IMG/VR virus record: IMGVR_UViG_3300023235_000008
Location: 1 to 64,000 of that record
DNA length: 64,000 nucleotides
Direction: 5' to 3' (one strand)
Both the position numbers and the translations under genes were made by a program. A model generated the notes under the pieces. It was not told the origin of the DNA. It saw nothing but the letters and a program-made list of their open reading frames with translations, and made no database searches. Positions 2,881 through 55,226 of the stretch are shown here, one piece after another. Each line of letters begins with the position of its first letter. The stretch's first letter is position 1.

Positions 2881-2937
2881 ACGTACAATAATATTGAGTG
2901 TAAAAATGCACTGTTCTGGTGGAAGATGAAAACATGA
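2881..2937 (+). pseudogene. Orphan tail of an HRxDGPA gene
   Basis: Reads TYNNIECKNALFWWKMKT*; CTGTTCTGGTGGAAGATGAAAACATGA is identical to the tails of downstream paralogs. Confidence 0.6.
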
Positions 2938-3335
2938 CTGAACCGATATGTCATACTTATGCAAATGGCGACAAGTATTGGTATCTACATGGCAAACTAC
3001 ATAGAACAGATGGACCAGCTGTTGAATATGCAAATGGCGACAAGTATTGGTTATTCAATGGTGAATCGCATAGGGAAGACGGACCAGCCATTGAAGAATC
3101 AAATGGTAGCAAGTGGTGGTTTAAGAATGGCGAAGTTCATAGGGATGACGGACCCGCCATTGAATATACAAATGGCACCAAAGAATGGTATTTGAATGAT
3201 AAACTACATAGAACAGATGGACCTGCCGTTGTACGTGCAAATGACACCGAATGGCGGTTGAATGGCGAACGTGTTACTATGGAAGACGTAATCACCGATC
3301 CAAAAGAACTGTTCTGGTGGAAGATGAAAACATGA
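2934..3335 (+). CDS. HRxDGPA repeat protein, 4 repeats
   Basis: Start at MTEPICHTY (ATGA overlap); conserved tail VTMEDVITDPKELFWWKMKT. Confidence 0.9.
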   Translation: MTEPICHTYANGDKYWYLHGKLHRTDGPAVEYANGDKYWLFNGESHREDGPAIEESNGSKWWFKNGEVHRDDGPAIEYTNGTKEWYLNDKLHRTDGPAVVRANDTEWRLNGERVTMEDVITDPKELFWWKMKT

Positions 3336-3730
3336 CTGAACCGATATGTCATACTTATGAAGATGGCACCAAACGTTGGTATACGAATGATAAACTTCAC
3401 AGAGAAGATGGACCTGCTGTTGAATATGCAAATGGTAGCAAATCTTGGTATCTACATGGCTTACGTCATAGAACAGATGGACCAGCAATCGAATCATATG
3501 GCAACATGTATTGGTATCTACATGGCAAACGTCATAGAGAAGATGGACCTGCTGTCGAAAATGTAAATGGCAACATGTATTGGTATCAATATGGCAAACG
3601 TCATAGAACAGATGGACCTGCTGTCATTTGCACGTACAACACCGAATGGCGGTTGAATGGCGAACGTGTTACTATGGAAGACGTAATCACCGATCCAAAA
3701 GAACTGTTCTGGTGGAAGTTAAGATCATGA
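3332..3730 (+). CDS. HRxDGPA repeat protein, 4 repeats
   Basis: Start corrected to the ATGA overlap (the ORF-track extension is the shifted frame of the previous tail). Confidence 0.9.
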   Translation: MTEPICHTYEDGTKRWYTNDKLHREDGPAVEYANGSKSWYLHGLRHRTDGPAIESYGNMYWYLHGKRHREDGPAVENVNGNMYWYQYGKRHRTDGPAVICTYNTEWRLNGERVTMEDVITDPKELFWWKLRS

Positions 3731-4062
3731 ATAAAAATGGAATGCATACCGATGCAAATGGCACCAAAGCTTGGTACTTTAATGATAAACTTCATAGAAC
3801 AGATGGACCTGCTATTGAAGAATCAAATGGCACCAAAGCTTGGTACTTGAATGGTGAATATCATCGAACAGATGGCCCTGCTATTGAATTTACAAATGGC
3901 GACAAACAATGGTTCAAGAATGGCAAACGTCATAGAACAGATGGACCTGCCATTGAGTTTGCTAATGGCAACAAGTATTGGTATTTGAATGGCGAACGTG
4001 TTACTATGGAAGACGTAATCACCGATCCAAAAGAACTGTTCTGGTGGAAGATGAAAACATGA
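3727..4062 (+). CDS. HRxDGPA repeat protein, 3 repeats
   Basis: MNKNGMHTDANGTKAW..., conserved tail; ATGA overlap. Confidence 0.9.
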   Translation: MNKNGMHTDANGTKAWYFNDKLHRTDGPAIEESNGTKAWYLNGEYHRTDGPAIEFTNGDKQWFKNGKRHRTDGPAIEFANGNKYWYLNGERVTMEDVITDPKELFWWKMKT

Positions 4063-4322
4063 CTGAACCGATATGTCATACTTATGAAGATGGCACCAAA
4101 TCTTGGTATTTGAATGATAAACTACATAGAACAGATGGCCCTGCCGTCGAATATGCAAATGGCACCAAACGTTGGTACTTGAATGATAAACTACATAGAA
4201 CAGATGGACCAGCTGTTGTACGTGCAAATGACACCGAATGGCGGTTGTATGGCGAACGTGTTACTATGGAAGACGTAATCACCGATCCAAAAGAACAGTT
4301 CTGGTGGAAACTAATATCTTGA
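4059..4322 (+). CDS. HRxDGPA repeat protein, 2 repeats
   Basis: MTEPICHTYEDG..., conserved tail; ATGA overlap. Confidence 0.9.
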   Translation: MTEPICHTYEDGTKSWYLNDKLHRTDGPAVEYANGTKRWYLNDKLHRTDGPAVVRANDTEWRLYGERVTMEDVITDPKEQFWWKLIS

Positions 4323-4351
4323 CATTACTACATTATATGATATATTAAATC

Positions 4352-4954
4352 ATGATGATGAAAAAACACACAATCAGTGTAATAGCATTACTAACAGCAT
4401 ATGCCGTAGGTAGCACACTATTGCACATATACCCCGAAAAACCAATGGTCCTCGTGCCCGCACCCATATCACCCGTATACGTAGAAATCCTCCCCGAACT
4501 ATATCCATGGGAAGATGCAAACGGAACACTACTAGACTGTAGTAAAGAACGTAGCGAACGTATCGCATTGGCTTGTAACATATACCATGAAGCACGTTCC
4601 GAAAGCCTACGTGGACAAGTAGCAGTGGCATTAGTAACACGTAATCGTGTCCTTTCAAAGAAATACCCCAATACATATGAAGAAGTGGTATGGGATATCA
4701 GACGTTCAGCTAAAACAAAACGTAAAGTGGCACAGTTCTCTTGGGCACTAGATGGTAAACACGATAGGGTATATGAACAACAAGCGTGGCGAACAGCTTG
4801 GGAAATCGCAGGGGATATATTAGCCAATAAATATACAGACTTTACAGAAGGTGCACTATGGTATCATACCAAAGCAGTTAATCCACGATGGAATAAACGT
4901 TTCAATGTTTCTACTATCATTGGGGATCATATCTTCTATGTCACACGAAACTGA
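4352..4954 (+). CDS. Cell-wall hydrolase, SleB/CwlJ (Hydrolase_2) family
   Basis: N-terminal TM segment; LACNIYHEARSE, GQVAVALVTRNRV, QFSW, GALWYH, IGDHIFY; leaderless promoter at 4319-4346. Confidence 0.9.
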   Translation: MMMKKHTISVIALLTAYAVGSTLLHIYPEKPMVLVPAPISPVYVEILPELYPWEDANGTLLDCSKERSERIALACNIYHEARSESLRGQVAVALVTRNRVLSKKYPNTYEEVVWDIRRSAKTKRKVAQFSWALDGKHDRVYEQQAWRTAWEIAGDILANKYTDFTEGALWYHTKAVNPRWNKRFNVSTIIGDHIFYVTRN

Positions 4955-5074
4955 TACAAAACTTGGCGGAAAGAAAATGGTCAACTTCATAGAGAAGATG
5001 GTCCAGCCGCTTATCCATATGATAACTGGGAATGGAATAAAATGACTGACAAAGAACATGGTATTTTGGAATAA
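4955..5074 (+). pseudogene. Chimeric remnant: HRxDGPA repeat fused to a WEWN cassette end
   Basis: Reads TWRKENGQLHREDGPAAYPYDNWEWNKMTDKEHGILE*; the ATG at 4938 is one A short of being in frame. Confidence 0.65.
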
Positions 5075-5219
5075 GTTACGTGAACCTATCAAAAAAGGGT
5101 GTTTCAATTGTCGGTATGAGAGAACCATACAAAAAAGTATGTATGAAAAAGATTCTAAAATGATGAATAACCCTGTTTATCCAGATGATAACTGGGAATG
5201 GAATGGCAAATGTGAATAA
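5058..5219 (+). CDS. KEFW-CxxC cassette-family protein (53 aa, not in ORF track)
   Basis: MVFWNKLREPIKKGCFNC...YPDDNWEWNGKCE. Confidence 0.7.
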   Translation: MVFWNKLREPIKKGCFNCRYERTIQKSMYEKDSKMMNNPVYPDDNWEWNGKCE

Positions 5220-5224
5220 AGAAG

Positions 5225-5284
5225 ATGGTATTTTGGAATAAGTTACGTGAACCAGTTGACAACTGGGAATGGAATGGCAAATGA
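5225..5284 (+). other. Empty cassette: leader joined directly to the WEWNG end (19 aa)
   Basis: MVFWNKLREPVDNWEWNGK*; the 5' part duplicates 5058-5086. Confidence 0.75.
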
Positions 5285-5344
5285 TATAGTATTACGTGTG
5301 GTAAATGTCATGAACGCCCGACACGTATACTGGGAATGGAATAA
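5285..5344 (+). pseudogene. Cassette fragment (CGKCHE core plus WEWN end in another frame)
   Basis: TCGKCHE matches the 22286 member; TACTGGGAATGGAATAAA follows out of frame. Confidence 0.55.
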
Positions 5345-5382
5345 ACATTGACAACATTAGTAATAACTGCTAGTATACATTA

Positions 5383-5544
5383 ATGAATAAAGAAAAGTTT
5401 TGGAAGTCATTAAGTCATAACTGTGCTAATAACAGTCGAGGATACAATCAATCAGTGTATTGCAAAATCAAATCGTGCACTTCGTCGGCAAGTATGAGGG
5501 AGTATGGTGAAGTGTTTTGGGAATGGGATGGAAATGACGGATAA
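5383..5544 (+). CDS. KEFW cassette-family protein (53 aa, not in ORF track)
   Basis: MNKEKFWKSLSHNC...C...C...FWEWDGNDG; leaderless promoter TTGACA(5348)-N17-TAGTAT-N6-ATG. Confidence 0.75.
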   Translation: MNKEKFWKSLSHNCANNSRGYNQSVYCKIKSCTSSASMREYGEVFWEWDGNDG

Positions 5545-5779
5545 AGAAAAGTTTTGGAAAACGTTACGTGAACCGTCTGAGAAATCATGTAAAAACTGTA
5601 AATGGCGATATGATATAAAATCAGTTAAACTGAATGAAGATGGTTCGGAATGCACTTCAGAGGATTACGACCATATTGGTGATATTTGTGAAGCGTGTAC
5701 AATGAATAGGCACATCAGGAGTAATAATGACACATCGAATGTTATCCTGCCTAAATGGCAATGGAATAATAAACATTGA
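5534..5779 (+). CDS. KEFW-CxxC cassette-family protein
   Basis: MTDKEKFWKTLREPSEKSCKNC...CEAC...WQWNN. Confidence 0.8.
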   Translation: MTDKEKFWKTLREPSEKSCKNCKWRYDIKSVKLNEDGSECTSEDYDHIGDICEACTMNRHIRSNNDTSNVILPKWQWNNKH

Positions 5780-5786
5780 CAACACC

Positions 5787-5929
5787 ATGGAATAAAGATT
5801 AAGTGAACCTAATAAAAAAGGTTGCTTTAACTGTCGGTTCGGACTACTTATATTGTCGTAAATGCGAACAATCAGGGTTATTCATCATTTCTGTATCCAG
5901 ACAACTGGGAATGGGATGGTTTGGCATAA
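5787..5929 (+). pseudogene. Frameshifted KEFW cassette
   Basis: LSEPNKKGCFNCRF, YCRKCEQ and YPDNWEWDGLA lie in three different frames. Confidence 0.65.
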
Positions 5930-6001
5930 TCTGAAATGTCCTACTAATCGTACAGTTGGCGTGGTTGATGCACGTTGAATTGATCGTTTTGCGTATTAGG
6001 A

Positions 6002-6290
6002 ATGGAATGGCGTGACGTAATGAAAGCCTTTTTTAAATTATTTAGAGAACTAAACGGACGTTATACTAATTACAATGGTCATAGAACTGACGGGCCATCT
6101 ATTGAACGTGTTACTATGGAAGATGGAATCATGAATGATGATGTTGTATGTGTGACAGATTCATATGGCAATAAGGCTTGGTATTTGAATGGCTTATGCT
6201 ATTGATTGTTAATGGCATCAATGACTGGTATTTACATGATAAAGAATATGATGTATTATCTGGGAAGGAAGCAATTGGGTATTGACGTAT
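6002..6290 (+). pseudogene. Decayed HRxDGPA gene fragments
   Basis: NGHRTDGPSIERVTMED joined to YGNKAWYLNG, followed by stops. Confidence 0.55.
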
Positions 6291-6519
6291 GACTGATGAT
6301 AAGGAAGAGTTTTGGAAGTCATTGACTACTATGCCTGTTATTGAGCGTTCCTGTGATAACTGTCGTTGGTTTAATGGTAAGTTTTGTATTGAGCCTATAT
6401 CTCTCCGCAATGACATTACGACTTGTATGTATGTTTATAGCGATGTTGATTATGATTCTGCGTATGTTAGTTATACTGGTTACAGTTTACCTAAATGGGA
6501 GCGTCGGGAGAATGATTGA
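6289..6519 (+). CDS. KEFW-CxxC cassette-family protein
   Basis: MTDDKEEFWKSLTTMP...CDNC...C...C...LPKWERR. Confidence 0.8.
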   Translation: MTDDKEEFWKSLTTMPVIERSCDNCRWFNGKFCIEPISLRNDITTCMYVYSDVDYDSAYVSYTGYSLPKWERREND

Positions 6520-6841
6520 ATGTAAGACTGATGATGCTGGCAACAAGTTTTGGTTTTTGAATGGTGAATATCATAGGGAAGACGGACCAGCTATTGAGTT
6601 TGCTAATGGCGACACGGTATGGTATATTAATGGCGAACGTCATAGGGAAGATGGTCCTGCTATTGAGTTTGCTAATGGCGACAAGTTTTGGTATAATCAT
6701 GACAATCGACATAGGGAAGATGGACCAGCTATTGAGTTTGCTAATGGCAACAAGTCTTGGTATTTACATGGTAAAGAAGTTACTGTGTATGATGTATTGA
6801 CTGATCCGAGAGAACAGTTTTGGTGGAAGATGAAATCATGA
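6512..6841 (+). CDS. HRxDGPA repeat protein, 3 repeats
   Basis: MIECKTDDAGNKFW...; tail VLTDPREQFWWKMKS; start corrected from 6341. Confidence 0.85.
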   Translation: MIECKTDDAGNKFWFLNGEYHREDGPAIEFANGDTVWYINGERHREDGPAIEFANGDKFWYNHDNRHREDGPAIEFANGNKSWYLHGKEVTVYDVLTDPREQFWWKMKS

Positions 6842-7005
6842 TTGAAAAAGAATCTATAGACCGGTTTGGCAACAAGTCGTGGCATGTGGGTGTGAAGCGT
6901 CATAGAGAAGTGGTGCCCGGTAGCGAAGCGACTGTTCGTTTTCAGAACAACATATGGCGTTCCCCGCTTTCCTGTTGTGTATCACATTTGGGAAGGCAAG
7001 TGTAA
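6838..7005 (+). pseudogene. Degenerate HRxDGPA-type ORF
   Basis: FGNKSWHVGVKRHRE, after which similarity is lost. Confidence 0.45.
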
Positions 7006-7165
7006 TGTCTAAGTTCAAGGTTGGAGAAAGAGTAAGAATTGGCAGGTATAAAACATATCTACAAAATGAAATGGATGGTGTGTATGAAGGCGGGTGGGTT
7101 GTTGAACCGGAGATATAATCCAACCTGTAGATACTGGATATGAAGAAATTATCAAAAGGAAAATA

Positions 7166-7363
7166 ATGATGTCTGATATGAAACCAAGAAAATTTCGACA
7201 CTGTATTTCACGAGTCTTTATTGACGGCGATGCGTGTATTACGGATGGTGTGATTACCGAGGTTGATGGAAACCAAGTTACTTTTCAAACCTACCCTGAT
7301 TGCGGCGATCCTGTTAAGATGTTCACGGTACATGAGATGTTATCTTATATTCGAAGTGAGTGA
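7166..7363 (+). CDS. Hypothetical protein
   Basis: Co-oriented 65-aa ORF overlapping an upstream small ORF. Confidence 0.55.
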   Translation: MMSDMKPRKFRHCISRVFIDGDACITDGVITEVDGNQVTFQTYPDCGDPVKMFTVHEMLSYIRSE

Positions 7364-7438
7364 AGAACGTATCGTTGCAACGGTAGGACTTTGATCCTAA
7401 TCCTTGACATATAGTAATTGTTATGATATGGTTATGTT

Positions 7439-7603
7439 ATGAATGACAAAGAAGAATTTTGGAAAGCATTGAAGTCACCTATACGTGAGTGTAAAAACTG
7501 TGCTGTTATACATTCGTATGGTATGTCTACATTAACTAACAAGTATTGTCGTGAGTATTGTATCTCATGCGATAATTTCAGTAAGTGGATATCTGATGAA
7601 TAA
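7439..7603 (+). CDS. KEFW-CxxC cassette-family protein (54 aa, not in ORF track)
   Basis: MNDKEEFWKALKSPIRECKNC...CREYCISC...KWISDE; leaderless promoter at 7404-7432. Confidence 0.8.
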   Translation: MNDKEEFWKALKSPIRECKNCAVIHSYGMSTLTNKYCREYCISCDNFSKWISDE

Positions 7604-7624
7604 TAAAGAATATCGGATGCGGTA

Positions 7625-7834
7625 ATGGTTCTGAAGCACAAGGCTGAAGCCCCTGAATGGTTAATAGCGCATGGTGCTAATATTTGGTTAATTGATTATG
7701 ACGACACTGACGATGAAACTATATTTCGTCCTATACTTAAAGCTATTGGTCAGGACGATGAAGGAATATTTGATCCGGCGTATGTTAACTATGAAGGACG
7801 TAGTTTACCTATGTGGAAGGCACGTGATGAGTAA
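7625..7834 (+). CDS. Hypothetical protein, probable cassette member that lost its leader
   Basis: C-terminus YVNYEGRSLPMWKARDE resembles the 6289 member (YVSYTGYSLPKWERREND); an out-of-frame MNNKEY at 7596. Confidence 0.5.
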   Translation: MVLKHKAEAPEWLIAHGANIWLIDYDDTDDETIFRPILKAIGQDDEGIFDPAYVNYEGRSLPMWKARDE

Positions 7835-8015
7835 GCAGGAATTTTGGAATGATTTGCGGTCGGTGCCATTATCTGACCGTGATTGTAATAACTGTTTATA
7901 TTACACACGTAATACCACGCAGAGTTGGCTTAATTGTATATATTGTGTCCAAGATGCTAAAGATAGTAAAAAGCCTGTTGGTGCTTCGTCTGGTAGTTAT
8001 TGGAAACCAAAATGA
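7827..8015 (+). CDS. KEFW-CxxC cassette-family protein
   Basis: MSKQEFWNDLRSVP...CNNC...CIYC...YWKPK; start corrected from 7692. Confidence 0.8.
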   Translation: MSKQEFWNDLRSVPLSDRDCNNCLYYTRNTTQSWLNCIYCVQDAKDSKKPVGASSGSYWKPK

Positions 8016-8196
8016 GTAAGCAGGAATTTTGGGATGCACACAACCAACACAAAGGGGTTGTGATAACTGTAAGTATAATAAAAGAATAAATGGGGGGATT
8101 TACTCAGTATGTAAGCGACCAAACCAAGTCTACGCCTGTGTTGGATTTTATGGAAAAAAATCGCAATGGGAATGGGATGGTAAGAACTATGGGTAA
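8012..8196 (+). pseudogene. Frameshifted KEFW cassette
   Basis: MSKQEFWDA, then a shift to TQPTQRGCDNC...C...C...QWEWDGKNYG*. Confidence 0.75.
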
Positions 8197-8211
8197 GATA
8201 AATACATTATA

Positions 8212-9441
8212 ATGTTATTAAATGATTTACTATTAGAATATAAAGAAGGCAAGAACCAGCACCTTCATCACGTTGAAGACATTGTATTTCACGAGGGTAA
8301 TGCTGGTGCACGTATTGCATTAAACTATATTGATAGCGTTCGTCAACTATTAGCACAGGGTGGTAACAGGCACGAAAGCATATCGGTTAAGTGGGATGGT
8401 GCGCCAGCTATTATATGTGGCATTGATCCTGCTGACGGTGAGTTTTTTGTTGGCACGAAGAGTGTATTCAATAAGACTGGTGGCAAGTTGATTAAGTCAC
8501 GTTCTGATTTAAAGAAGTATGGTTACGAGGGTGAGTTAGCAAACAAACTTATGTTAGCATTGACGCATTTATCCAAGTTAGGCATCACTGGTGTGTTACA
8601 GGGTGATATGATGTATACCCGAGATGATCTTGAGACAAAGACATTTGGTGGTGAAGAATACCTTATGTTTCAGCCTAATACGATTACGTATGCTGTTCCT
8701 ATTAATAGCGACGTTGCGAAGACTATGCGTAGATCGAAGATTGGTATTGTATTTCACACACGTTACAGTGGCGACAGCATTGGTGAAATGACGGCGGAAT
8801 TTGGTGCTAGTATTTCGGGATTGAATAGTGTATCGGATGTATGGTATGATGATGCATCTTACAAGGATTTGACTGGCATTGCATCATTAACCAAGGCGGA
8901 GAACGATAAACTTATCAGTGATATAGCGGCTACCAAACGTGCTATTAAGATTGCGAAGTTTGATGCATTGAAGAGTCAATATAGTCCATTGCTTATGACG
9001 TTTGTTAATAGTCGTATTCGTAAGGGTGATGATCAGGTTGCACATCCGCATGATTTTGCAGAAGGTTTCACTAAATGGTATGCGGCACGATTGATGCATG
9101 AGATTAGCAAATTAAAGAATCAAGACCCTGATGCGAAGCCTGTTCAGAATCGTATGAAGAAGATTGAAGAACAGAAGGAATACATGAAGCGTAATTTTAA
9201 GGGTATTATTGCTGGGTTAATGGTTTACAAGGATTTGATTGTTTTAAAGAATCAGTTATTAAACAAACTGAATAAGATTGATACGATGAAAAGTTTAGTA
9301 AAGACGGATGATGGTTACAAGGTAGTTAATCCCGAGGGGTTTGTTGCTATTGGTGCCGCTGGTGGGGCGATTAAATTAGTTGATCGTATGAGCTTTTCTA
9401 AAATGAATTTTGATGCAGCAAAAGACTGGAAAAAGACGTGA
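8212..9441 (+). CDS. Conserved T4-like phage protein (DUF6267-like)
   Basis: KNQHLHHVED, SVKWDGAPAIICG, FFVGTKSVFNK, VLQGD, FQPNTITYAVP, PEGFVA, IKLVDRMSFS; late promoter ATAAATA just upstream. Confidence 0.85.
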   Translation: MLLNDLLLEYKEGKNQHLHHVEDIVFHEGNAGARIALNYIDSVRQLLAQGGNRHESISVKWDGAPAIICGIDPADGEFFVGTKSVFNKTGGKLIKSRSDLKKYGYEGELANKLMLALTHLSKLGITGVLQGDMMYTRDDLETKTFGGEEYLMFQPNTITYAVPINSDVAKTMRRSKIGIVFHTRYSGDSIGEMTAEFGASISGLNSVSDVWYDDASYKDLTGIASLTKAENDKLISDIAATKRAIKIAKFDALKSQYSPLLMTFVNSRIRKGDDQVAHPHDFAEGFTKWYAARLMHEISKLKNQDPDAKPVQNRMKKIEEQKEYMKRNFKGIIAGLMVYKDLIVLKNQLLNKLNKIDTMKSLVKTDDGYKVVNPEGFVAIGAAGGAIKLVDRMSFSKMNFDAAKDWKKT

Positions 9442-22089: not shown

Positions 22090-22293
22090 ATGAATAAAAA
22101 AGAACACCAGTTTTGGAATATTTTAACCAATCCGATACCAGAACCTCGTTGTTCTAACTGTAGACACCGAGAGTATTTTAATGATACATGCTATCGTCTA
22201 CGTGAAACTGGCGAAGAAGAATGCGCTATATTTCTTATTAATGTGGTCCAAACTTATCCTTTTTGGGAATGGGATGGAACTTTTGATGAATAA
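22090..22293 (+). CDS. KEFW-CxxC cassette-family protein
   Basis: MNKKEHQFWNILTNP...CSNC...C...C...FWEWDG; leaderless promoter at 22055-22083. Confidence 0.8.
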   Translation: MNKKEHQFWNILTNPIPEPRCSNCRHREYFNDTCYRLRETGEEECAIFLINVVQTYPFWEWDGTFDE

Positions 22294-22489
22294 GAATGAG
22301 TTTATCAAGGCTTTATCTGAACCGTATGATAAAAGTTGTCTGAACTGTAAGTTTGCCAGACGGTCTGGCACAATGCCAGAGGATGGATATAATAACAAGT
22401 GTGGGAAGTGTCACGAACACGATCCAGAAATGATAAATAAACCTGACCTGTATCCAGAAGACAACTGGGAATGGAACGGCGACAAATGA
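22286..22489 (+). CDS. KEFW-CxxC cassette-family protein
   Basis: MNKNEFIKALSEP...CLNC...CGKC...DNWEWNGDK. Confidence 0.8.
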   Translation: MNKNEFIKALSEPYDKSCLNCKFARRSGTMPEDGYNNKCGKCHEHDPEMINKPDLYPEDNWEWNGDK

Positions 22490-22713
22490 ATAAAGATAAA
22501 GAACAGTTTTGGGAATCAATGGTATCGCCTGAAATCGGGTGCGGCACATGTAAGCACTTAGAACCAGATGGTGCCGAAAGTTGTGGGAGGGTGCTACTAC
22601 AGGACGAGGATGAATGCATTGTTGTATCCCGCATGGTGAGTGACAGTCACCCGAAGAGTATATACCCACATTGGGAATGGGATGGAGTTAACACAGAGGA
22701 CAATGACCGATGA
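22486..22713 (+). CDS. KEFW-CxxC cassette-family protein
   Basis: MNKDKEQFWESMVSP.GCGTC...C...C...HWEWDG. Confidence 0.8.
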   Translation: MNKDKEQFWESMVSPEIGCGTCKHLEPDGAESCGRVLLQDEDECIVVSRMVSDSHPKSIYPHWEWDGVNTEDNDR

Positions 22714-23051
22714 TATGTAAAGAAGATTTTATATTTGGATTAACGGCTTCAAGTAATGACATTGAATTCGAGAAACGGCGTCGTGAATATGCCAAAAAAT
22801 ATAAAAGGGCGAAGAGAAATGCGCTGAAAGAGTTTAAAGACACACCTACCAAAGCGCTTCTCAATATGCGATATGGTTATTTTAGGAATGAGTATAGTGA
22901 TGATGATGAATATCATAGTCGGGAAGGTGTATCCGATGCGGTGTATGAGATTCTAAGCACCCGAGAGCACATTCCGAACAAACTTGAAGGCAAACGTGCC
23001 CGTCAAGCAAAGGCGAAAATGGGTAGACATAAAGGAAGACGTGATAAATGA
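22710..23051 (+). CDS. Hypothetical basic protein
   Basis: ATGA-coupled; body ends REHIPNKLEGKRARQAKAK; weak leader-like start KEDFIFGL. Confidence 0.7.
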   Translation: MICKEDFIFGLTASSNDIEFEKRRREYAKKYKRAKRNALKEFKDTPTKALLNMRYGYFRNEYSDDDEYHSREGVSDAVYEILSTREHIPNKLEGKRARQAKAKMGRHKGRRDK

Positions 23052-23218
23052 ATAAGACTGAGTTTATCAATGCGTTAAGTGAGCCTACTAAAAAAGGTTG
23101 CTTTAATTGCAAGTTCAAATACGAGAATTGGTGTGTGACGTGTCACGAACACGATCCAGAAATTATGGCAACCCTTAGTTATCAAGAAGATAACTGGGAA
23201 TGGAACGGCGACAAATGA
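23048..23218 (+). CDS. KEFW-CxxC cassette-family protein (56 aa, not in ORF track)
   Basis: MNKTEFINALSEPTKKGCFNC...CVTCHEHDPE...DNWEWNGDK. Confidence 0.8.
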   Translation: MNKTEFINALSEPTKKGCFNCKFKYENWCVTCHEHDPEIMATLSYQEDNWEWNGDK

Positions 23219-23703
23219 ATAAAGAAAAGTTTTGGGAAGCATTGCAAGCACCGATACGCCGTGATTATTGGAATACCGAAGAGTTCGGACTTGAACTTGA
23301 AAAATGGTTTGGGTATTCTAATCTACGGGAAGCCGAACATCATCATACTTTTAACAGTATTATAAAACGGTTTCCTAACCTTCCGTCATACATTGATCGT
23401 ATTAATATTGAAAATGAACAGCGGGCTGAACAACGGCGGCGTGATTATGACACGTGGACTAGAAAGAATGTAACACTTGTTGAAGTAGATATGCTTGCTG
23501 GTGGAAAAGATAGCCATCCTGATATCAAAACAGATAGTACACAATATCTTGCGCTGATTGGTGGAGGGTTTGTTGCTGGAACGTTTAGTAAGGTTAACGA
23601 GAAGGGTAGACTAAACTTTTGGGGTGGCTATAACCAACAGTATGATAAACCGGGATATAACAGCAGCGACTGGCAAAAACTATGGGAAATCGTAACCAAA
23701 TGA
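23215..23703 (+). CDS. KEFW leader fused to an unrelated Cys-free body
   Basis: MNKEKFWEALQAP, then about 150 aa of different sequence ending LWEI. Confidence 0.75.
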   Translation: MNKEKFWEALQAPIRRDYWNTEEFGLELEKWFGYSNLREAEHHHTFNSIIKRFPNLPSYIDRINIENEQRAEQRRRDYDTWTRKNVTLVEVDMLAGGKDSHPDIKTDSTQYLALIGGGFVAGTFSKVNEKGRLNFWGGYNQQYDKPGYNSSDWQKLWEIVTK

Positions 23704-28955: not shown

Positions 28956-30029
28956 ATGAAAATATCGTTTATAGGGCTTGGTAAACTTGGTTTGCCGTGC
29001 GCTGAAGAAATTGCTAAAAAAGGTCATACTGTTACCGGTTATGATATCCAAGGGTTCAAGTCAGATTTGGTTACTAGTGTGGAATCAATCAAAGATTTAA
29101 TACACCACGACTACAGTAACCGCCCTGATATTTTATTTATCGCAGTTCCAACACCCCACGAAGAATCTTATGATGGTCGATACCCAACTGCGCATTTGCC
29201 ACCAAAAGATTTTGACTACACCATTGTTAAAGATGTGATGAAAGAAGTTAATCGTTATAGTAATCGCCAGACACTGGTGGTCCTTGTATCGACCGTGCTA
29301 CCCGGCACAGTTCGCCGTGAGCTTATTGATGTGATTCCACGTAATCGCTTTGTATACAATCCATACCTAATCGCTATGGGAACAGTTGGATGGGATATGG
29401 TCAATCCAGAAATGGTAATGATTGGTACTAAAGATGGCGATGAAACAACTGAAGCACGAGAGTTGATTGATTTCTATGAAACCGTTATGGATAATGACCC
29501 ACGTTATGTTGTCGGAACATGGGATGAAATGGAATGCGTGAAGATTTTCTACAATACATTCATTTCTACAAAAATCGGTCTTGTGAATATGATTCAAGAC
29601 GTTGCTGAAAAGCAAGGCAATATCAATGTTGATGTAGTTACAGATGCCATTGCGCATTCAACACACCGTATTATGTCACCTATGTATATGAAGGCTGGCA
29701 TGGGCGATGGGGGTGCTTGTGTTAAATCTGACTTTAAAATTAATGTAAATGACGCACATATTGAAATCAGCGAGTTATATAACACATTTAACGACACTGA
29801 ATATTATATCGTAGATTCAATGAATTGGGCAGGAACAAAGAAAGACCAAAAGAAAATTGCCGATGTTACTATGCGAGAATATAGCGGCCCATTGTATACT
29901 TTTACTACCGAATCTGGAAAGAAAATATCAGTTACAAAAGATCATTTAATTCCAGTAGAACGAAAAAGAAAACGAATTATTATAAAGGCAGAAGACATCA
30001 AAGAAACAGATAAATTATTTATTTTATAG
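28956..30029 (+). CDS. ugd: UDP-glucose/GDP-mannose dehydrogenase N-half fused to a split-intein N part
   Basis: Rossmann IGLGKLG, IAVPTP, STVLPG, YNPYLI, KIFYN, GMGDGGA, then intein start C255 (29718) with block B VTKDH. Confidence 0.9.
   Translation: MKISFIGLGKLGLPCAEEIAKKGHTVTGYDIQGFKSDLVTSVESIKDLIHHDYSNRPDILFIAVPTPHEESYDGRYPTAHLPPKDFDYTIVKDVMKEVNRYSNRQTLVVLVSTVLPGTVRRELIDVIPRNRFVYNPYLIAMGTVGWDMVNPEMVMIGTKDGDETTEARELIDFYETVMDNDPRYVVGTWDEMECVKIFYNTFISTKIGLVNMIQDVAEKQGNINVDVVTDAIAHSTHRIMSPMYMKAGMGDGGACVKSDFKINVNDAHIEISELYNTFNDTEYYIVDSMNWAGTKKDQKKIADVTMREYSGPLYTFTTESGKKISVTKDHLIPVERKRKRIIIKAEDIKETDKLFIL
29718..30029 (+). mobile_element. Split intein, N fragment (103 aa)
   Basis: CVKSDFKI... 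after GDGGA; YTFTTESGKKISVTKDH; ends in a basic tail at its own stop. Confidence 0.85.
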
Positions 30030-33912: not shown

Positions 33913-34152
33913 ATGAATAAAGAAAAGTTTTGGAAAGCATTGCGTGAACCAACACACCATAACTGCCGTAACTGTAAACATCTTGATCATTTTGCGAATA
34001 TGGGTATGGGAAATTACTCTGTTGTGTGTGACACCAAATCTGAAAATGGTCGTATGCTAGACCCTGATTGTGCTAGCATTTCACACCCAATCAGTGGAGC
34101 CACCCGAGCATTATATAAAGATAATTGGGAATGGAATGGAAAAGATGAATAA
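33913..34152 (+). CDS. KEFW-CxxC cassette-family protein
   Basis: MNKEKFWKALREP...CRNC...C...C...DNWEWNG. Confidence 0.8.
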   Translation: MNKEKFWKALREPTHHNCRNCKHLDHFANMGMGNYSVVCDTKSENGRMLDPDCASISHPISGATRALYKDNWEWNGKDE

Positions 34153-34345
34153 AGATAAAGAACTGTTTTGGGAAGAACTCTGCGCCGACCCACCAGAACC
34201 AAAACCATATATAGTATCATATTACGATGATGGACATCACGTAGAGGTAGAATATTCGGATGGAAGTATTAGTGCGTGGGGCAAAGATATAGAAGAAGAA
34301 CTGATGCGATTGTTGGTAACCGAGATTGAAGATGATAGTAAATAG
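34145..34345 (+). CDS. KEFW leader fused to an unrelated acidic body
   Basis: MNKDKELFWEELCADP, then YIVSYYDDG...; no WEW. Confidence 0.65.
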   Translation: MNKDKELFWEELCADPPEPKPYIVSYYDDGHHVEVEYSDGSISAWGKDIEEELMRLLVTEIEDDSK

Positions 34346-36407: not shown

Positions 36408-36608
36408 ATGATTACCACCCCTATAACTCTAGCATTATTGTTAATGATTGTGACCAGCATGATTCGTGTTTTGATGAATGGGGAAAATGGCAGCAATATT
36501 GATAAGATTATGGCGATGGCGATGACCCTCGCGCCGCTAATGGTAGTCACTGGCATGGTGTTTATATCCTATGTCGTCTTCAACTTCATTTCCGCACTGA
36601 TCGGCTAA
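36408..36608 (+). CDS. Small membrane protein
   Basis: AAGGAG SD; two TM helices. Confidence 0.6.
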   Translation: MITTPITLALLLMIVTSMIRVLMNGENGSNIDKIMAMAMTLAPLMVVTGMVFISYVVFNFISALIG

Positions 36609-36898
36609 TGAACAAACAACAATTTTTCAAGGCCCTCTCAGAACCCACTGTAAAAGCCAAACGAATGAATAAAGAAGAATTCTGGCAAGCATTGAGTCAA
36701 CCTATATTTCACAGGCACACTTGCGCCTCTTGTAAATACGCCGAGCATGGTAATCCTAAAGGATGGGGGGCGGACCATGACCAGACGTACGATTACAAAC
36801 CCTGTATGGTGTGCCAAACCACGCCCCCGAACGATCTAATGCATAAAGACAATGCATGGGAATGGGATGGTAAAACTATGCCTGATGATGAGTATTAA
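36608..36898 (+). CDS. KEFW-CxxC cassette-family protein with a duplicated leader
   Basis: MNKQQFFKALSEP..MNKEEFWQALSQP...CASC...CMVC...AWEWDG. Confidence 0.8.
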   Translation: MNKQQFFKALSEPTVKAKRMNKEEFWQALSQPIFHRHTCASCKYAEHGNPKGWGADHDQTYDYKPCMVCQTTPPNDLMHKDNAWEWDGKTMPDDEY

Positions 36899-36899
36899 T

Positions 36900-37127
36900 A
36901 TGAATAGCGAAAAAGAAGAGTTCTGGAATACATTGACCGATCCTGTATTTAAGGCTTATGGATGTGGAACCTGCAAATATAAAGAAAATGTCACGAAGAA
37001 GGGGGAGTGTCGGCACCCCGATAATATACGGTATGATGTTTGCAATTCATGGATTCATCCATCCATGACTAACAATAATCTATGGGCGTGGGATGGTGAA
37101 ACCTATCACGATTATGAGTATGAATAA
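36900..37127 (+). CDS. KEFW-CxxC cassette-family protein
   Basis: MNSEKEEFWNTLTDP...CGTC...C.HP...C...LWAWDG. Confidence 0.8.
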   Translation: MNSEKEEFWNTLTDPVFKAYGCGTCKYKENVTKKGECRHPDNIRYDVCNSWIHPSMTNNNLWAWDGETYHDYEYE

Positions 37128-37332
37128 AGAAAAAGAAGAGTTCTGGAATACATTGACTGAGCCTGTATTTAATGAATATGGATGCAATACATGTAAATAT
37201 GAGAGTGGGATTGGATGCTCCCATCCCGACATTGCCGGGACAAGCCTACTGTCCAGATGCACATCCTACAAGCATCCCTCTACCACCTCTTATAACCAAT
37301 GGGAATGGGATGGCAAAACCTATAATGAATAA
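37120..37332 (+). CDS. KEFW-CxxC cassette-family protein
   Basis: MNKEKEEFWNTLTEP...CNTC...C.HP...C...QWEWDG. Confidence 0.8.
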   Translation: MNKEKEEFWNTLTEPVFNEYGCNTCKYESGIGCSHPDIAGTSLLSRCTSYKHPSTTSYNQWEWDGKTYNE

Positions 37333-39725: not shown

Positions 39726-40007
39726 ATGAAACTACCTATAAACTATACGAGAATCGGTGCACGCGAGCGTCGTGAAGTCCGTGAAGAATACATTCGCATT
39801 CAAGACGGAAAATGTTGGTGGTGTGAGAACGCACTTACCGATAATCCTACCACTGAGATTATGGATACAGATGTTAATCGTCGGTTATTCCCGCCGAACT
39901 TCTTTAAGCATCCTGTTCACTTACAGCATGATCATGATACTGGTATGACCGAAGGTGCGGTTCATGCCAGATGCAATGCAGTAATGTGGCAATACCACGG
40001 GAAATGA
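39726..40007 (+). CDS. Endonuclease VII-like / HNH-type small protein
   Basis: QDGKCWWC...HLQHDHDTG...GAVHARCN. Confidence 0.8.
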   Translation: MKLPINYTRIGARERREVREEYIRIQDGKCWWCENALTDNPTTEIMDTDVNRRLFPPNFFKHPVHLQHDHDTGMTEGAVHARCNAVMWQYHGK

Positions 40008-40195
40008 ACGACAGGGAAAAGTTTTGGCAGGATTTATCAAAGCCGCCGTTGAATAGACGAGGTTGCCGCAACTGTATTCATTTCGCTTCATCGGGTTTAC
40101 TAAGCGATTGTATGAATCCAGTGGGCATGACAATATGTAGTGGGGGGCGTGACGAGTATTGGGAGTGGAATGGCGAACATTGTTATGGACGATAA
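40004..40195 (+). CDS. KEFW-CxxC cassette-family protein
   Basis: MNDREKFWQDLSKPP...CRNC...C...C...YWEWNG. Confidence 0.8.
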   Translation: MNDREKFWQDLSKPPLNRRGCRNCIHFASSGLLSDCMNPVGMTICSGGRDEYWEWNGEHCYGR

Positions 40196-40314
40196 AGAAA
40201 AGTTTTGGCAGGATTTATGCAAACGCACAGATTTATTGTAAAAAACAGATGGGTCAACGCATAACTACAACATGCGAACCATGTATGTGGGAATGGGATG
40301 GAATAAGGGAATGA
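40185..40314 (+). pseudogene. Deleted/frameshifted KEFW cassette
   Basis: MDDKEKFWQDL..., then out-of-frame YC...CEPCMWEWDGIRE*. Confidence 0.7.
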
Positions 40315-40382
40315 ACATGAAAAAAATAGAAGGTGACAAGTTCTTTTGGGCAACATTAAAAGGGGAATTTGATGAGATATAA
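40311..40382 (+). other. Leader-only mini-ORF (23 aa)
   Basis: MNMKKIEGDKFFWATLKGEFDEI*; ATGA-coupled. Confidence 0.4.
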
Positions 40383-54771: not shown

Positions 54772-54993
54772 TTGGCTAAAGAAGAATTGCTAGAATTAGA
54801 GGGTGAAATCATTGACGTTTTACCACAAAGTATGTTTAAAATCAAAGTGGATAATTCGGAACACATAGTTCTGGCATATCTTAGCGGAAAGATGCGCAAG
54901 TTCAAAATCAAGTTGGTATTGGGCGATAAGGTTAAAATCGAAGTGTCACCATATGACGTTTCAAAAGGTCGAGTAACTTATAGGCATAAATGA
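54772..54993 (+). CDS. infA: Translation initiation factor IF-1
   Basis: [10 protein letters not shown]...LP..MF.....[12 protein letters not shown]....GDKV..E.SPYD..KGR.TYR. Confidence 0.95.
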
Positions 54994-55226
54994 TGGACAA
55001 AGACAAAGATAAAGAACAGTTTTGGGACGATTTAAAAGCACCGTTTGCACCAGAAAACTGCGGGTGTGTTAGTTGCGCCCGTCCAAGTGCAGGTATGATG
55101 ATGTCGCCCAACTTTCTGTATGCATGTGAAATCTGCGGCAATAAACGGTGCCCGCATCACACGCATCATGCACGTGCATGTACTAACAGTAATGAACCGG
55201 GACAAAAAGGAAGTATTTACAAATGA
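54990..55226 (+). CDS. KEFW leader fused to a different Cys/His-rich domain
   Basis: [14 protein letters not shown], then [12 protein letters not shown]...[12 protein letters not shown]. Confidence 0.75.

What the first reader, a model, noticed from the sequence alone, without database searches (positions are those of the whole stretch)
5042..5929. Empty and decayed cassettes show that the ends are units independent of the middle
Seen: 5225-5284 encodes MVFWNKLREPVDNWEWNGK, the leader of 5058 joined straight to the WEWNG end with no core. 5285-5344 is a core-plus-end without a leader. 5787-5929 has two frameshifts. Its GAACCTAATAAAAAAGGTTGCTTTAACTGT matches copies at about 5082 and 23078, 17 kb away. 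Other broken copies lie at 8012, 21259 and 40185, and 40311 is a leader-only ORF. Inference: there is high birth/death turnover with recombination at the conserved ends, and this 1-kb region is a graveyard or nursery.
Basis: seen in the sequence. Interest (0 to 1): 0.7.

Follow-up and report, generated by a model that had tools for sequence, protein, structure and literature searches.

The report
Decaying gene array in giant phage
This 1-kb stretch of an uncultivated T4-type giant phage from a salt lake holds mostly broken copies of a large, unnamed family of small four-cysteine proteins, and comparison with related phages shows that the family gains, loses and swaps genes by recombination in its conserved N-terminal coding segment.

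Summary
Positions 4955-5929 hold seven copies or fragments of one small-protein family. Its plan is an N-terminal "leader" (MNKEKFWxxLxxP), a CxxC, a variable core with two more Cys, and a "tail" (WEW[ND]G) near the C-terminus.

- **Real sequence:** three other IMG/VR contigs and independent Logan contigs carry the identical sequence, so it is not an assembly collapse.
- **Real family:** the 230-kb contig has about 29 full-length copies plus at least 15 fragments. At least 130 further 50%-identity clusters exist in metagenomes. Pfam, PHROGs, NCBIfam, PDB and 50,697 cultured phages give no match.
- **Protein-level selection:** synonymous sites in leader and tail vary, and the one clear orthologue pair has dN/dS of 0.12.
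- **Fold:** the AlphaFold2 models are most confident at the two termini, and the DSSP bridges imply that they touch.
- **Turnover and leader recombination are supported:** a 61/62-nt identical leader is shared by paralogues 117 kb apart, a core is swapped between leaders in related contigs, a strain patch ends at the leader's FW codons, and syntenic slots hold different copy numbers.
- **The empty cassette:** it is a microhomology deletion in a tandem duplicate, which is decay and not modular assembly.

The region is a graveyard; I found no sign of a nursery. Function is unknown; I favour early zinc-binding host-takeover proteins.

The parts
4955..5045 (+). Orphan fragment with no start codon, in frame directly after the stop of the SleB-like hydrolase gene. 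It holds one MORN-type repeat unit (..WRKENGQLHREDGPA..) joined to a family tail (YPYDNWEWNK).
   Evidence: The tail DNA 5011-5038 is 96% identical to 5177-5204. The non-own HMM matches positions 57-75 only, at 12 bits.
5042..5074 (+). Frameshifted original leader (MTDKEHGILE*). In run X6 this reads as the canonical MTDKEQFWNKLREP and overlaps an upstream ..WEWNGK* stop by ATGA.
   Evidence: The X6 differences are +GG after 5038, -2 at 5059 and -2 at 5062, rebuilt and translated.
5058..5219 (+). 53-aa copy of the GCFNC..HEHDPE..YPDDNWEWNG subfamily. It has a new ATG created by the 4-nt leader change, and it lacks the third and fourth family cysteines.
   Evidence: Its 3' half aligns to 22286 and 23048. 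It scores 35 bits against the non-own HMM, versus 39-66 bits for typical intact copies.
5225..5284 (+). 'Empty' copy: a 19-aa ORF with the leader joined to the tail. It is a tandem duplicate of 5058 with the core deleted between two Pro codons.
   Evidence: 5218-5253 is 97% identical to 5051-5086, and 5252-5283 is 94% identical to 5181-5212. The HMM matches two separate pieces, leader positions 11-24 and tail positions 63-70.
5285..5351 (+). Remnant holding the second Cys knuckle (CGKCHE) and the tail (YWEWNKH) in different frames. It has no leader and no first knuckle.
   Evidence: The alignment to 22393-22492 shows a ~32-nt internal deletion.
5348..5376 (+). Sigma-70-like promoter-like site (TTGACA, 17-nt spacer, TAGTAT, with TG) just upstream of the 5383 start codon. 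This is a weak call.
   Evidence: Across the region such sites are no more frequent than in shuffles (19 found versus 18.1 expected).
5383..5544 (+). 53-aa copy of another subfamily. The ORF is open, but it lacks the near-invariant Pro and the second Cys of the CxxC, leaving 3 Cys.
   Evidence: It scores 24 bits against the non-own HMM.
5534..5779 (+). 81-aa copy with all family hallmarks (6 Cys, tail WQWNNKH). Its start overlaps the end of the previous gene by 11 nt. It is the only fully canonical member in the stretch.
   Evidence: It scores 53 bits against the non-own HMM. The overlap is shown.
5787..5929 (+). Pseudogene of the GCFNC subfamily, with a stop inside a shortened leader and two frameshifts.
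   Evidence: 5799-5830 is 94% identical to 23075-23106. The HMM finds only fragments, at 16 and 9 bits.
6289..6519 (+). 76-aa copy with a degenerate tail (KWERREND).
   Evidence: HMM positions 8-55 only.
7439..7603 (+). 54-aa copy without a WxW tail (..KWISDE).
7827..8015 (+). 62-aa copy with a truncated tail (..SYWKPK*).
8012..8196 (+). Broken copy: the leader MSKQEFWDA, one frameshift, then GCTQPTQRGCDNC..WEWDGKNYG.
22090..22713 (+). Array of three intact, overlapping copies. It includes 22286-22489, an intact relative of the decayed subfamily.
23048..23218 (+). 56-aa intact member of the decayed subfamily, used for the better structure model.
33913..34152 (+). 79-aa intact copy. Its leader plus first knuckle (33921-33985) is 61/62 nt identical to the paralogue at contig position 151819 on the other strand. 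It has an orthologue in L019.
   Evidence: The orthologue is 72% identical with dN/dS 0.12.
36608..37332 (+). A leader-only piece fused in frame upstream of a full copy, followed by two more overlapping copies.
40004..40382 (+). An intact copy (40004-40195), a frameshifted copy (40185-40314) whose intact counterpart is L019:7090-7293, and a leader-only ORF (40311-40382).

Best explanation
**What it is**
- The window is the first 64 kb of a 230-kb contig, about 65% of a giant phage of roughly 350 kb from salt-lake metagenomes. The phage has a T4-type capsid protein and prohead protease.
- It carries a large family of paralogous genes for small proteins of 53-110 aa.
- Each protein has an N-terminal helix motif (K-E-x-F-W-x-x-L-x-x-P) followed 4 or 6 residues later by CxxC. 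Then comes a length-variable core with two more Cys, and W-x-W-[DN]-G lies 3-6 residues from the C-terminus.

**Shown**
- The family is real and under purifying selection.
- Copy number differs between related phages.
- Leader-coding DNA has been exchanged between paralogues and between strains.
- Positions 4955-5929 hold one canonical gene, two open but degenerate genes and four fragments.

**Inferred: how the region arose**
- A member of the GCFNC..HEHDPE subfamily was duplicated in tandem several times.
- The copies then decayed by small indels, by a microhomology deletion that left leader plus tail, and by a larger deletion that left knuckle plus tail.
- Conversion between leaders moved a derived 4-nt change from one copy to another.

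**Inferred: why the ends stay conserved**
- The two ends are parts of one small fold.
- The N-terminal helix and first knuckle sit against the C-terminal WxW around a four-Cys metal site, probably zinc.
- The loop between them is free to vary.
- Because the leader is the longest stretch of near-identical DNA among copies (25-65 nt), it also serves as the substrate for homologous recombination.

**Inferred, with low confidence: function**
- These are early-expressed, cytoplasmic, zinc-binding proteins that bind varied host targets for takeover or counter-defence. That would explain the expansion and turnover.
For: **Family membership and spread**
- Profile A1 finds 171 representatives at E<=1e-3 among 1.84 billion proteins. 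All 150 listed share the architecture, and 18 of them are from this contig.
- Among 100 members, 77 have exactly 4 Cys. The Pro-to-CxxC spacing is 4 residues in 61 and 6 in 23. WxW lies 3-6 residues from the end in 78.
- An HMM built only from 115 foreign homologues finds about 29 full-length copies and at least 15 partial ones in the contig. It grades the copies of this region at 53, 35 and 24 bits, and the fragments at 7-16 bits.

**Selection on the protein**
- Synonymous positions of conserved leader and tail codons vary: AAA/AAG, TTA/TTG/CTA/CTG, CCT/CCA/CCG/CCC and GGC/GGA/GGT/GGG.
- dN/dS is 0.12 for the 33913 orthologue pair, compared with 0.07-0.09 for the neighbouring PstS-like and PurS-like genes. 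Paralogue pairs give 0.18 and 0.26.

**Fold**
- In the AlphaFold2 model of the 79-aa member, pLDDT is 89/85 at the N-terminus, 83 at the C-terminus and 54-63 in the middle.
- The 56-aa member has mean pLDDT 77. Its only two beta-bridge residues are Cys21 and Trp52.

**Recombination and turnover**

**Sequence is real**

**Gene packing**
- In 20 of 32 copies the next gene's ATG overlaps the copy's 3' end by 4-11 nt.

**T4-type virion genes**
Against: - Zinc binding is inferred from the Cys pattern only. The zinc co-folding job was not run by the tool.
- The models have middling confidence (pTM 0.46-0.51) and match nothing in PDB or AlphaFold DB. The termini contact rests on DSSP bridges, not on coordinates that I could inspect.
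- The leader also heads proteins that lack the Cys core and the tail. A purely structural role for the leader inside this one fold does not explain that.
- No expression data: no RNA run was listed.
- Early expression rests on a few promoter-like sites that are no more frequent than chance.
- No recombinase was found in the part of the genome held. That search used a RecA model only, and 35% of the genome is missing.
Confidence: 0.6

Rival explanations
1. The leader is a targeting peptide, like the capsid targeting sequence of T4 internal proteins. Under this reading a short conserved N-terminal sequence directs more than 40 otherwise diverse small proteins into the T4-type prohead. The prohead protease may cut it off after L-x-E. 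The proteins would then be injected with the DNA as counter-defence factors.
For: - The phage encodes a gp21-type prohead protease and a gp23-type capsid protein.
- The leader heads unrelated bodies, and one such protein keeps its leader in a related phage.
- L-x-E sits at the end of the leader in 39 of 93 members.
Against: - The Glu is not conserved (42%), and the next residue is a near-invariant Pro, which is an unlikely cleavage position.
- The leader is modelled as part of the fold.
- The conserved tail and the four Cys are left unexplained.
- No T4-type late promoter (TATAAATA) lies near any array, although six other genes in the window have one directly upstream.
Confidence: 0.15
2. The small genes are precursor peptides of a ribosomally made, enzyme-modified natural product library. 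The conserved leader would be recognised by a radical SAM maturase. The Cys residues or the WxW..K tail would be the cross-linking sites.
For: - Five tandem paralogues of an uncharacterised radical SAM subfamily (NF033640) lie at contig positions 140-148 kb. They are interleaved and translationally overlapped with leader-bearing small ORFs.
- A radical SAM gene of the same subfamily lies about 1 kb from family genes in L018.
- A conserved leader with a variable core in many dispersed copies recalls prochlorosin-type libraries (from memory).
Against: - Most copies are 100 kb or more from the radical SAM genes.
- The small ORFs next to those genes are mostly atypical, lacking the tail or the Cys pattern.
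- Vibrio phages K566 and K567 carry a similar radical SAM triplet with no small ORFs between the genes. A tblastn search with one family member (33913) found nothing in any cultured phage.
- The proteins are modelled as folded, with confident termini.
- There is no recognisable leader cleavage motif.
- Small leader-bearing ORFs sit between many kinds of genes in this phage.
Confidence: 0.05
3. The conserved ends are DNA or RNA signals and not protein motifs. The tail DNA (TGGGAATGGRATGG) would supply the ribosome-binding region and start codon for the next gene. The leader DNA would be a mobile regulatory cassette like the PeSL elements of T4-type phages.
For: - Read one base on, the tail gives G-N-G-M, and 20 of 32 copies overlap the next gene's ATG.
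- PeSL elements mediate modular shuffling in the hyperplastic regions of T4-type genomes (PMC2839356; PMC4122927).
Against: - Synonymous positions in the leader and tail vary while the amino acids stay fixed.
- The functional start is usually a separate ATG downstream of the tail.
- Promoter-like and terminator-like sites are at chance level: 19 found versus 18.1 expected, and 2 versus 2.0.
- The tail is kept in copies that are followed by nothing.
Confidence: 0.05
4. A programmed cassette system (integron-, shufflon- or antigenic-variation-like) assembles genes from separate leader, core and tail units. The empty copy would be an acceptor site.
For: Leader-plus-tail and leader-only units exist.
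Against: - The empty copy carries the same derived leader defect as its neighbour and has a microhomology junction.
- No conserved site-like repeat flanks the cores.
- No recombinase gene is next to the arrays in the window (and the ORF lists).
- The sequence is identical in at least five samples, so no ongoing rearrangement is visible.
Confidence: 0.03
5. The short forms are assembly collapses of full-length repeats.
For: The region is rich in short repeats.
Against: - The repeats are at most 36 nt, which is shorter than reads.
- Four JGI assemblies and Logan contigs from other runs agree base for base.
- The joints reported by the tool trace to paralogues elsewhere in the genome, for example the 23205 tail-leader junction.
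Confidence: 0.02

Closest known systems
Hyperplastic regions of T4-type phages, with PeSL-mediated modular shuffling (Arbiol et al. 2010, PMC2839356; Comeau et al. 2014, PMC4122927)
   Same: - Both involve a T4-type phage.
- Clusters of small non-essential genes sit between conserved blocks.
- Insertions, deletions and replacements between close relatives are bounded by a short conserved sequence that recurs many times in the genome.
   Different: - Here the recurring sequence is coding: the first ~13-22 codons of the genes themselves, kept by selection on the protein.
- It is not an intergenic promoter plus stem-loop.
- Promoter-like and terminator-like sites are at chance level.
- The shuffled genes all belong to one protein family.
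T4 internal proteins IPI, IPII and IPIII with their capsid targeting sequence (PMC3012670)
   Same: - A short conserved N-terminal peptide heads otherwise diverse small proteins.
- The phage has a gp21-type protease and a gp23-type capsid.
- The loci vary between relatives.
   Different: - There are more than 40 carriers here instead of three.
- Most also share four Cys and a C-terminal WxW motif.
- The Glu of a would-be L-x-E cleavage site is present in only 42%, and a Pro follows it.
- Virion location is untested.
Small zinc-ribbon / treble-clef type Cys4 proteins
   Same: - Two Cys pairs, the first always CxxC.
- Size of 55-100 aa and no signal peptide.
- Scattered sub-threshold hits to zinc-ribbon and zinc-finger models.
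   Different: - No Pfam, NCBIfam or PDB profile reaches threshold.
- No structural match.
- The flanking FW..L..P helix and the WEW[DN]G tail are not features of known ribbons.
Prochlorosin-type precursor peptide libraries (from memory, not tested here)
   Same: Many dispersed genes have a conserved N-terminal part and a very variable Cys-containing part.
   Different: - The leader here is only ~13-20 aa.
- The C-terminus is conserved as well.
- The proteins are modelled as folded.
- The link to a modifying enzyme is weak.
Gene-family 'accordion' expansions and decay in poxviruses and giant viruses (from memory, not tested here)
   Same: Tandem duplication, divergence and pseudogenes of a host-interaction family, with copy number differing between close relatives.
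   Different: This is a phage, the genes are much smaller, and exchange of a specific coding segment between paralogues is documented.

Membership tests
The unnamed phage small Cys4 family (defined here by profile A1/A2 and the non-own HMM) | N-terminal motif K-E-x-F-W-x-x-L-x-x-P | tested here: met
   - W, L and P are at least 90% conserved in 100 members.
- Present in 5534. Altered in 5058 (new start MVFW) and in 5383 (no Pro).
- Stop-interrupted in 5787. Absent in 5285 and 4955.
The unnamed phage small Cys4 family | CxxC 4 or 6 residues after the Pro, plus two further Cys in the core | tested here: met
   - 77 of 100 members have exactly 4 Cys.
- Within the finding only 5534 meets it. 5058 has the CxxC only. 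5383 has lost Cys2. The 5225 copy has no Cys.
The unnamed phage small Cys4 family | W-x-W-[DN]-G 3-6 residues from the C-terminus | tested here: met
   - Both Trp are at least 90% conserved.
- WEWDG or WEWNG occurs in 54 of 100 members.
- Present in 5011, 5058, 5225, 5285, 5383 and 5787. It is a variant (WQWNN) in 5534.
PeSL regulatory cassettes of T4-type phages | A strong sigma-70-like promoter plus a stem-loop terminator between the shuffled genes | tested here: not met
   - In 4300-8400 there are 19 promoter-like sites versus 18.1 expected, and 2 terminator-like sites versus 2.0 expected.
- Many copies overlap their neighbours, leaving no intergenic space.
T4 internal proteins / capsid targeting sequence | The phage has a T4-type prohead protease and capsid | tested here: met
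   Peptidase_S77 matches at 90 bits and Gp23 at 331 bits in the contig.
T4 internal proteins / capsid targeting sequence | The leader ends in a protease site (L/I)-x-E. This requirement is taken from established knowledge of T4 gp21. | tested here: inconclusive
   L-x-E occurs in 39 of 93 members and is followed by a near-invariant Pro.
T4 internal proteins / capsid targeting sequence | The protein is present inside the virion | not testable with these tools
   This needs virion proteomics.
RiPP precursor peptides with a radical SAM maturase | The precursor genes are genomically coupled to the maturase | tested here: inconclusive
   - Five NF033640 genes are interleaved with leader-bearing ORFs at contig 140-148 kb.
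- About 25 canonical copies lie elsewhere.
- A similar enzyme cluster in Vibrio phage K566 has no small ORFs.
Zinc ribbon families in Pfam / NCBIfam | A profile match above the curated cut-off | tested here: not met
   There are no hits above cut-off for 100 members. Only scattered hits at E of 0.006-0.1 to assorted zinc-finger models appear.
Any PHROG or cultured-phage gene | Sequence similarity | tested here: not met
   - PHROGs gives nothing better than E=0.079, from one hit.
- tblastn of the 33913 product against 50,697 phage records finds no match at E<=0.01.

The most novel reading that the evidence does not exclude
The 13-residue leader may be a portable recognition signal that marks more than 40 different small proteins of a giant T4-type phage for one common fate. 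That fate could be loading into the prohead and injection, or hand-over to a shared modifying enzyme. The arrays would then be a fast-turnover library of delivered effectors. The leader's coding DNA would double as the recombination handle that lets new bodies be plugged behind the signal.
Probability: 0.15. Interest if true: 0.75.

Novelty: new variant of a known kind. Interest (0 to 1): 0.45.

Why it matters
Giant phages carry hundreds of small genes of unknown function, and how these gene sets are renewed is poorly understood.

- **A clean case.** A single family makes up a sizeable share of the small genes of one phage. It has relatives in many metagenomes but none found in cultured phages.
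- **The renewal mechanism can be read from the sequence.** It involves tandem duplication, exchange at a short conserved coding segment, and decay by small deletions.
- **A variant of T4-type 'modular shuffling'.** Here the recombination handle is part of the protein and not an intergenic regulatory cassette.
- **A definable family.** It could be turned into a family model for annotating giant-phage genomes.
- **Experimental prospects.** The members of about 56-80 aa are suitable for metal-binding and structural work. If the leader proves to be a targeting or recognition signal, the system would be of wider interest.

Tried and rejected
- **Named-family searches.** Pfam, PHROGs, NCBIfam, a PDB sequence profile, Foldseek against PDB and AlphaFold DB clusters, and VIA-align wide gave no usable match.
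- **ESM Atlas.** It returned only unnamed viral clusters and a weak DUF6472 lead (score 0.87-0.88, 165-167 shared features). Pfam scans of 100 members did not confirm it.
- **Literature.** A search for the motifs WEWDG, WEWNG and FWKAL found nothing relevant. A search for the radical SAM subfamily found no functional study.
- **Cultured phages.** Megablast of 4300-8300 and tblastn of one member against cultured phages found no match.
- **The search for related loci with the family alignment.** A single protein worked.
- **Fetching the X6 haplotype.** A predicted 35-mer was not found in viral contigs. The metagenome scan returned only this contig and a sister contig. The variant was therefore rebuilt from the tool's difference tables and should be treated as approximate.
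- **Zinc co-folding.** The job was counted but not folded, so it is no evidence either way.
- **RNA evidence.** No run was listed.
- **RecA-type recombinase.** None was found in the 65% of the genome that is held.
- **dN/dS of intact versus broken copies across strains.** Not possible. The available strains are identical over the region apart from the 4916-5063 patch.
- **DGR-type mutagenesis.** Rejected as the source of core diversity, on inspection only. The cores of different copies do not align at all, so they do not differ only at particular bases.
Full report
**Source and setting**

The window is positions 1-64000 of a 230,059-bp IMG/VR viral contig that CheckV rates 65% complete, which implies a genome of roughly 350 kb. 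Sequencing runs that hold the region are labelled salt lake metagenome. The contig encodes a T4-type prohead protease (Peptidase_S77, 90 bits) and a gp23-type major capsid protein (331 bits), so it is a giant T4-type phage. Other genes in the window include:
- a SleB-like cell-wall hydrolase at 4352-4954;
- ClpX-like, UvdE, PstS-like, CCA/poly(A) polymerase and DUF6267 genes.

No cultured phage matches the DNA. Large proteins match only distantly, at about 25% identity, to giant Sinorhizobium and Escherichia phages.

**Checking the observation**

- 5058-5219 encodes a 53-aa protein with the leader MVFWNKLREP, a GCFNC knuckle and the tail DNWEWNGKCE.
- 5225-5284 encodes the 19-aa leader-plus-tail peptide.
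- 5285-5351 holds a CGKCHE knuckle and a YWEWNKH tail in different frames.
- 5787-5929 has a stop inside a shortened leader and two frameshifts.
- 8012, 21259, 40185 and 40311 are a frameshifted copy, a 17-aa leader-only ORF, another frameshifted copy and a 23-aa leader-only ORF.

The DNA repeats are far beyond chance: 36 nt at 97%, 32 nt at 94%, 28 nt at 96%, and 32 nt at 94% to the copy at 23075.

I add two things.
- The stretch 4955-5045 lies directly after the hydrolase stop and in the same frame. It is one MORN-type repeat unit joined to another family tail, with no start codon.
- The two short 'intact' ORFs are themselves degenerate. 5058 has lost the third and fourth family cysteines. 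5383 has lost the near-invariant Pro and the second Cys.

**Is the sequence real?**

Three other IMG/VR contigs from different samples are 100% identical to the window over 4000-9000. Logan contigs come from an independent assembler.
- The Logan contig of run X1 spans 4900-6100 with no difference.
- Logan contigs of X5, X8 and X9 cover large parts with no difference.

The repeats are at most 36 nt, so collapse is unlikely. Only contigs were available, not raw reads. The joints that the tool reports trace to paralogues elsewhere in the genome.

**What the units are**

The 'cassettes' are genes of one protein family. A six-frame scan of the contig found about 32 copies with the same plan. A profile of 20 window copies was searched against 1.84 billion representative proteins. 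It found 171 hits at E<=1e-3. Of the 150 listed, 18 are from this contig, and all of the others share the architecture.

In an alignment of 100 members, W7, L10, P13, four Cys and both tail Trp are at least 90% conserved. Further counts from the same 100 members:
- 77 have exactly four Cys.
- The CxxC lies 4 residues after the Pro in 61 members and 6 residues after it in 23.
- The WxW lies 3-6 residues from the end in 78.

An HMM built only from 115 foreign homologues recovers about 29 full-length and at least 15 partial matches in the contig. It grades the copies of the finding as follows:

| Copy | Score against the non-own HMM |
|---|---|
| 5534 | 53 bits |
| 5058 | 35 bits |
| 5383 | 24 bits |
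| Fragments | 7-16 bits |

Nothing in Pfam, PHROGs, NCBIfam or PDB matches. A tblastn search with one member found nothing in 50,697 cultured phages.

**Why the ends are conserved**

Conserved leader and tail codons differ freely at synonymous positions: Lys AAA/AAG, Leu TTA/TTG/CTA/CTG, Pro with all four codons, Gly with all four codons. The conservation is therefore on the protein and not on the DNA.

The one clear orthologue pair is 33913 and its counterpart in L019. It has dN/dS of 0.12 over the whole length, core included. The neighbouring PstS-like and PurS-like genes give 0.09 and 0.07.

AlphaFold2 with the 100-sequence alignment gave two models.
- The 79-aa member has pLDDT of 89/85 at the N-terminus, 83 at the C-terminus and 54-63 in the middle.
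- The 56-aa member has mean pLDDT 77 and a helix at residues 3-11. Its only two beta-bridge residues are the second Cys and the second Trp.

I read this as one small fold in which the two conserved ends pack together around a four-Cys site and the loop between them varies. Zinc binding is an inference from the Cys pattern and the lack of a signal peptide. The co-folding job was not run by the tool. No structural neighbour was found.

**History of the 1-kb region**

All copies at 5011-5351 and at 5787-5929 belong to one subfamily (GCFNC .. CxxCHEHDPE .. YP[DE]DNWEWNG). Its intact members are at 22286 and 23048.

The 5058 and 5225 copies share a derived 4-nt change in the leader. This change breaks the original start (MTDKEHGILE*, 5042-5074) and creates a new ATG.

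The empty copy joins ..GAACC to AGTTGACAACTGG.., while the parent copy has ..GAACC|TATC.. and ..TATCC|AGATGATAACTGG... The junction therefore falls at two Pro codons with 2-3 nt of microhomology. This is a deletion in a tandem duplicate. It is not an assembly from parts.

The 5285 remnant lost its leader and first knuckle, and it carries a ~32-nt internal deletion. The 5787 copy decayed by small indels.

In run X6, a different sample and year, the contig differs from the window only between 4916 and 5063.
- Rebuilt from the difference tables, the upstream tail there reads WEWNGK*.
- The first leader reads as the canonical MTDKEQFWNKLREP with an ATGA overlap.
- The 5225 copy keeps the derived form.

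The same complex change is thus present in two leaders in one strain and in one leader in the other. That requires a leader-specific conversion in one of the two lineages. The right edge of the patch is the FW codons of the leader.

**Recombination and turnover elsewhere**

- **Leader exchange within the genome.** 33921-33985 (leader plus first knuckle) is 61/62 nt identical to the paralogue at contig position 151819 on the opposite strand, 117 kb away. After that point the two sequences are unalignable. The L019 orthologue of 33913 has the same leader and knuckle at the protein level, so 33913 was probably the donor.
- **Core swap between strains.** Contigs L018 and L022-L024 are 100% identical from the leader of one family gene onward. 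Upstream they carry entirely different cores. Similarity resumes in the previous leader.
- **Chimera.** P0075 in L019 shares its C-terminal 30 residues with the 40004 lineage but has a different N-terminal half.
- **Copy-number differences.** L019 is syntenic with window 33-42 kb, with framework genes at 57-86% identity. It holds 5 family genes where the window has 3, and 7 where the window has 2. Only 33913 has an orthologue. The broken 40185 copy has an intact counterpart there.

Turnover, and exchange at the leader, are therefore well supported. I found no exchange bounded by the tail.

**The leader as a module**

The leader alone also heads ORFs with unrelated bodies.
- 34145-34345 keeps its leader in the L019 orthologue, at 51% identity.
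- 23215-23703 has one homologue, and that homologue has a different N-terminus.

This is the best argument that the leader has a role of its own. Two readings follow.

*Targeting signal.* It could work like the capsid targeting sequence of T4 internal proteins, which are diverse apart from that sequence (PMC3012670).
- For: the phage has the matching protease and capsid.
- Against: the Glu of a would-be L-x-E site is present in only 39 of 93 members and is followed by Pro. Also, no TATAAATA late promoter lies near the arrays.

*Maturase recognition sequence.* Five tandem radical SAM genes of the uncharacterised NF033640 subfamily lie at contig 140-148 kb, interleaved with leader-bearing small ORFs.
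- Against: most family copies are far from these genes. A similar enzyme triplet in Vibrio phage K566 has no small ORFs.

I rate the targeting reading at about 0.15 and the maturase reading at about 0.05.

**Comparison with known systems**

The closest known process is modular shuffling in the hyperplastic regions of T4-type phages, mediated by PeSL promoter/stem-loop cassettes (PMC2839356; PMC4122927). The difference is that here the recurring handle is coding sequence under protein-level selection. Promoter-like and terminator-like sites are at chance level. The genes are tightly packed, with 20 of 32 copies overlapping the next start by 4-11 nt.

**Verdict**

- Turnover and leader recombination are supported, and 'graveyard' fits.
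- The empty cassette is decay and not evidence of modular assembly, and nothing suggests a nursery.
- The family is uncharacterised and absent from cultured phages.
- The evolutionary process is a variant of a known one.
- Function remains an inference.

Noticed in passing
window 2910-4235, also 6341-6841; contig 139036-139802: There are four tandem paralogous genes built of 69-nt (23-aa) MORN-like repeats (YANGxKxWYLNGKxHRxDGPAxE). Each ends in ..(E/Q)(L/Q)FWWK(M/L)K(S/T)*, which resembles the family leader KEQFWKAL. A single such repeat unit is the fragment fused to a family tail at 4955-5045.
   Followed up: partly
contig G000 140011-147995 (- strand), outside the window: Five tandem paralogues of the uncharacterised 'twitch domain-containing radical SAM' subfamily NF033640 score 217-392 bits. 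Small leader-bearing ORFs overlap their ends, and three ~290-300-aa ORFs that look like glycosyltransferases lie nearby.
   Followed up: partly
window 4916-4925 in run X6: In the X6 strain a 10-nt deletion shifts the last 12 codons of the SleB-like hydrolase. The ORF then runs on into the ..AYPYDNWEWNGK* tail. The hydrolase loses its conserved C-terminal GDHIFY and gains a family tail. This was rebuilt from contig difference tables and is approximate.
   Followed up: partly
window 17859, 30059, 40851, 48763, 50064 (+) and 38300 (-): The T4 late-promoter consensus TATAAATA lies within about 50 nt upstream of ORF starts at 17895, 30085, 40902, 48792, 50077 and 38295(-). The total count (10) is not above chance, but the placement suggests T4-type late transcription.
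   Followed up: no
window 28956-30029: A UDP-glucose/GDP-mannose dehydrogenase-like ORF has a sub-threshold match to the intein splicing domain (33.2 bits, cut-off 35.8) over its last ~90 residues. This may be an intein or a remnant of one.
   Followed up: no
window 40902-41906 and L019:7903-8907: A PstS-like phosphate-binding protein gene (PBP_like_2) is 81% identical in the related phage. It is an auxiliary metabolic gene typical of aquatic phages.
   Followed up: no
window 121377-121565 region of the contig; protein P0015: In another phage (P0015, 159 aa) a family member is fused in frame to the protein that in this contig is the separate downstream gene (MNKPNLINIDR..), which is joined here only by an ATGA overlap.
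   Followed up: no
window 54990-55226: A 78-aa leader-bearing protein has 7 Cys and several His (..CGCVSC..CEIC..C..H.HH..C..) and no WxW tail. It is a divergent offshoot of the family.
   Followed up: no
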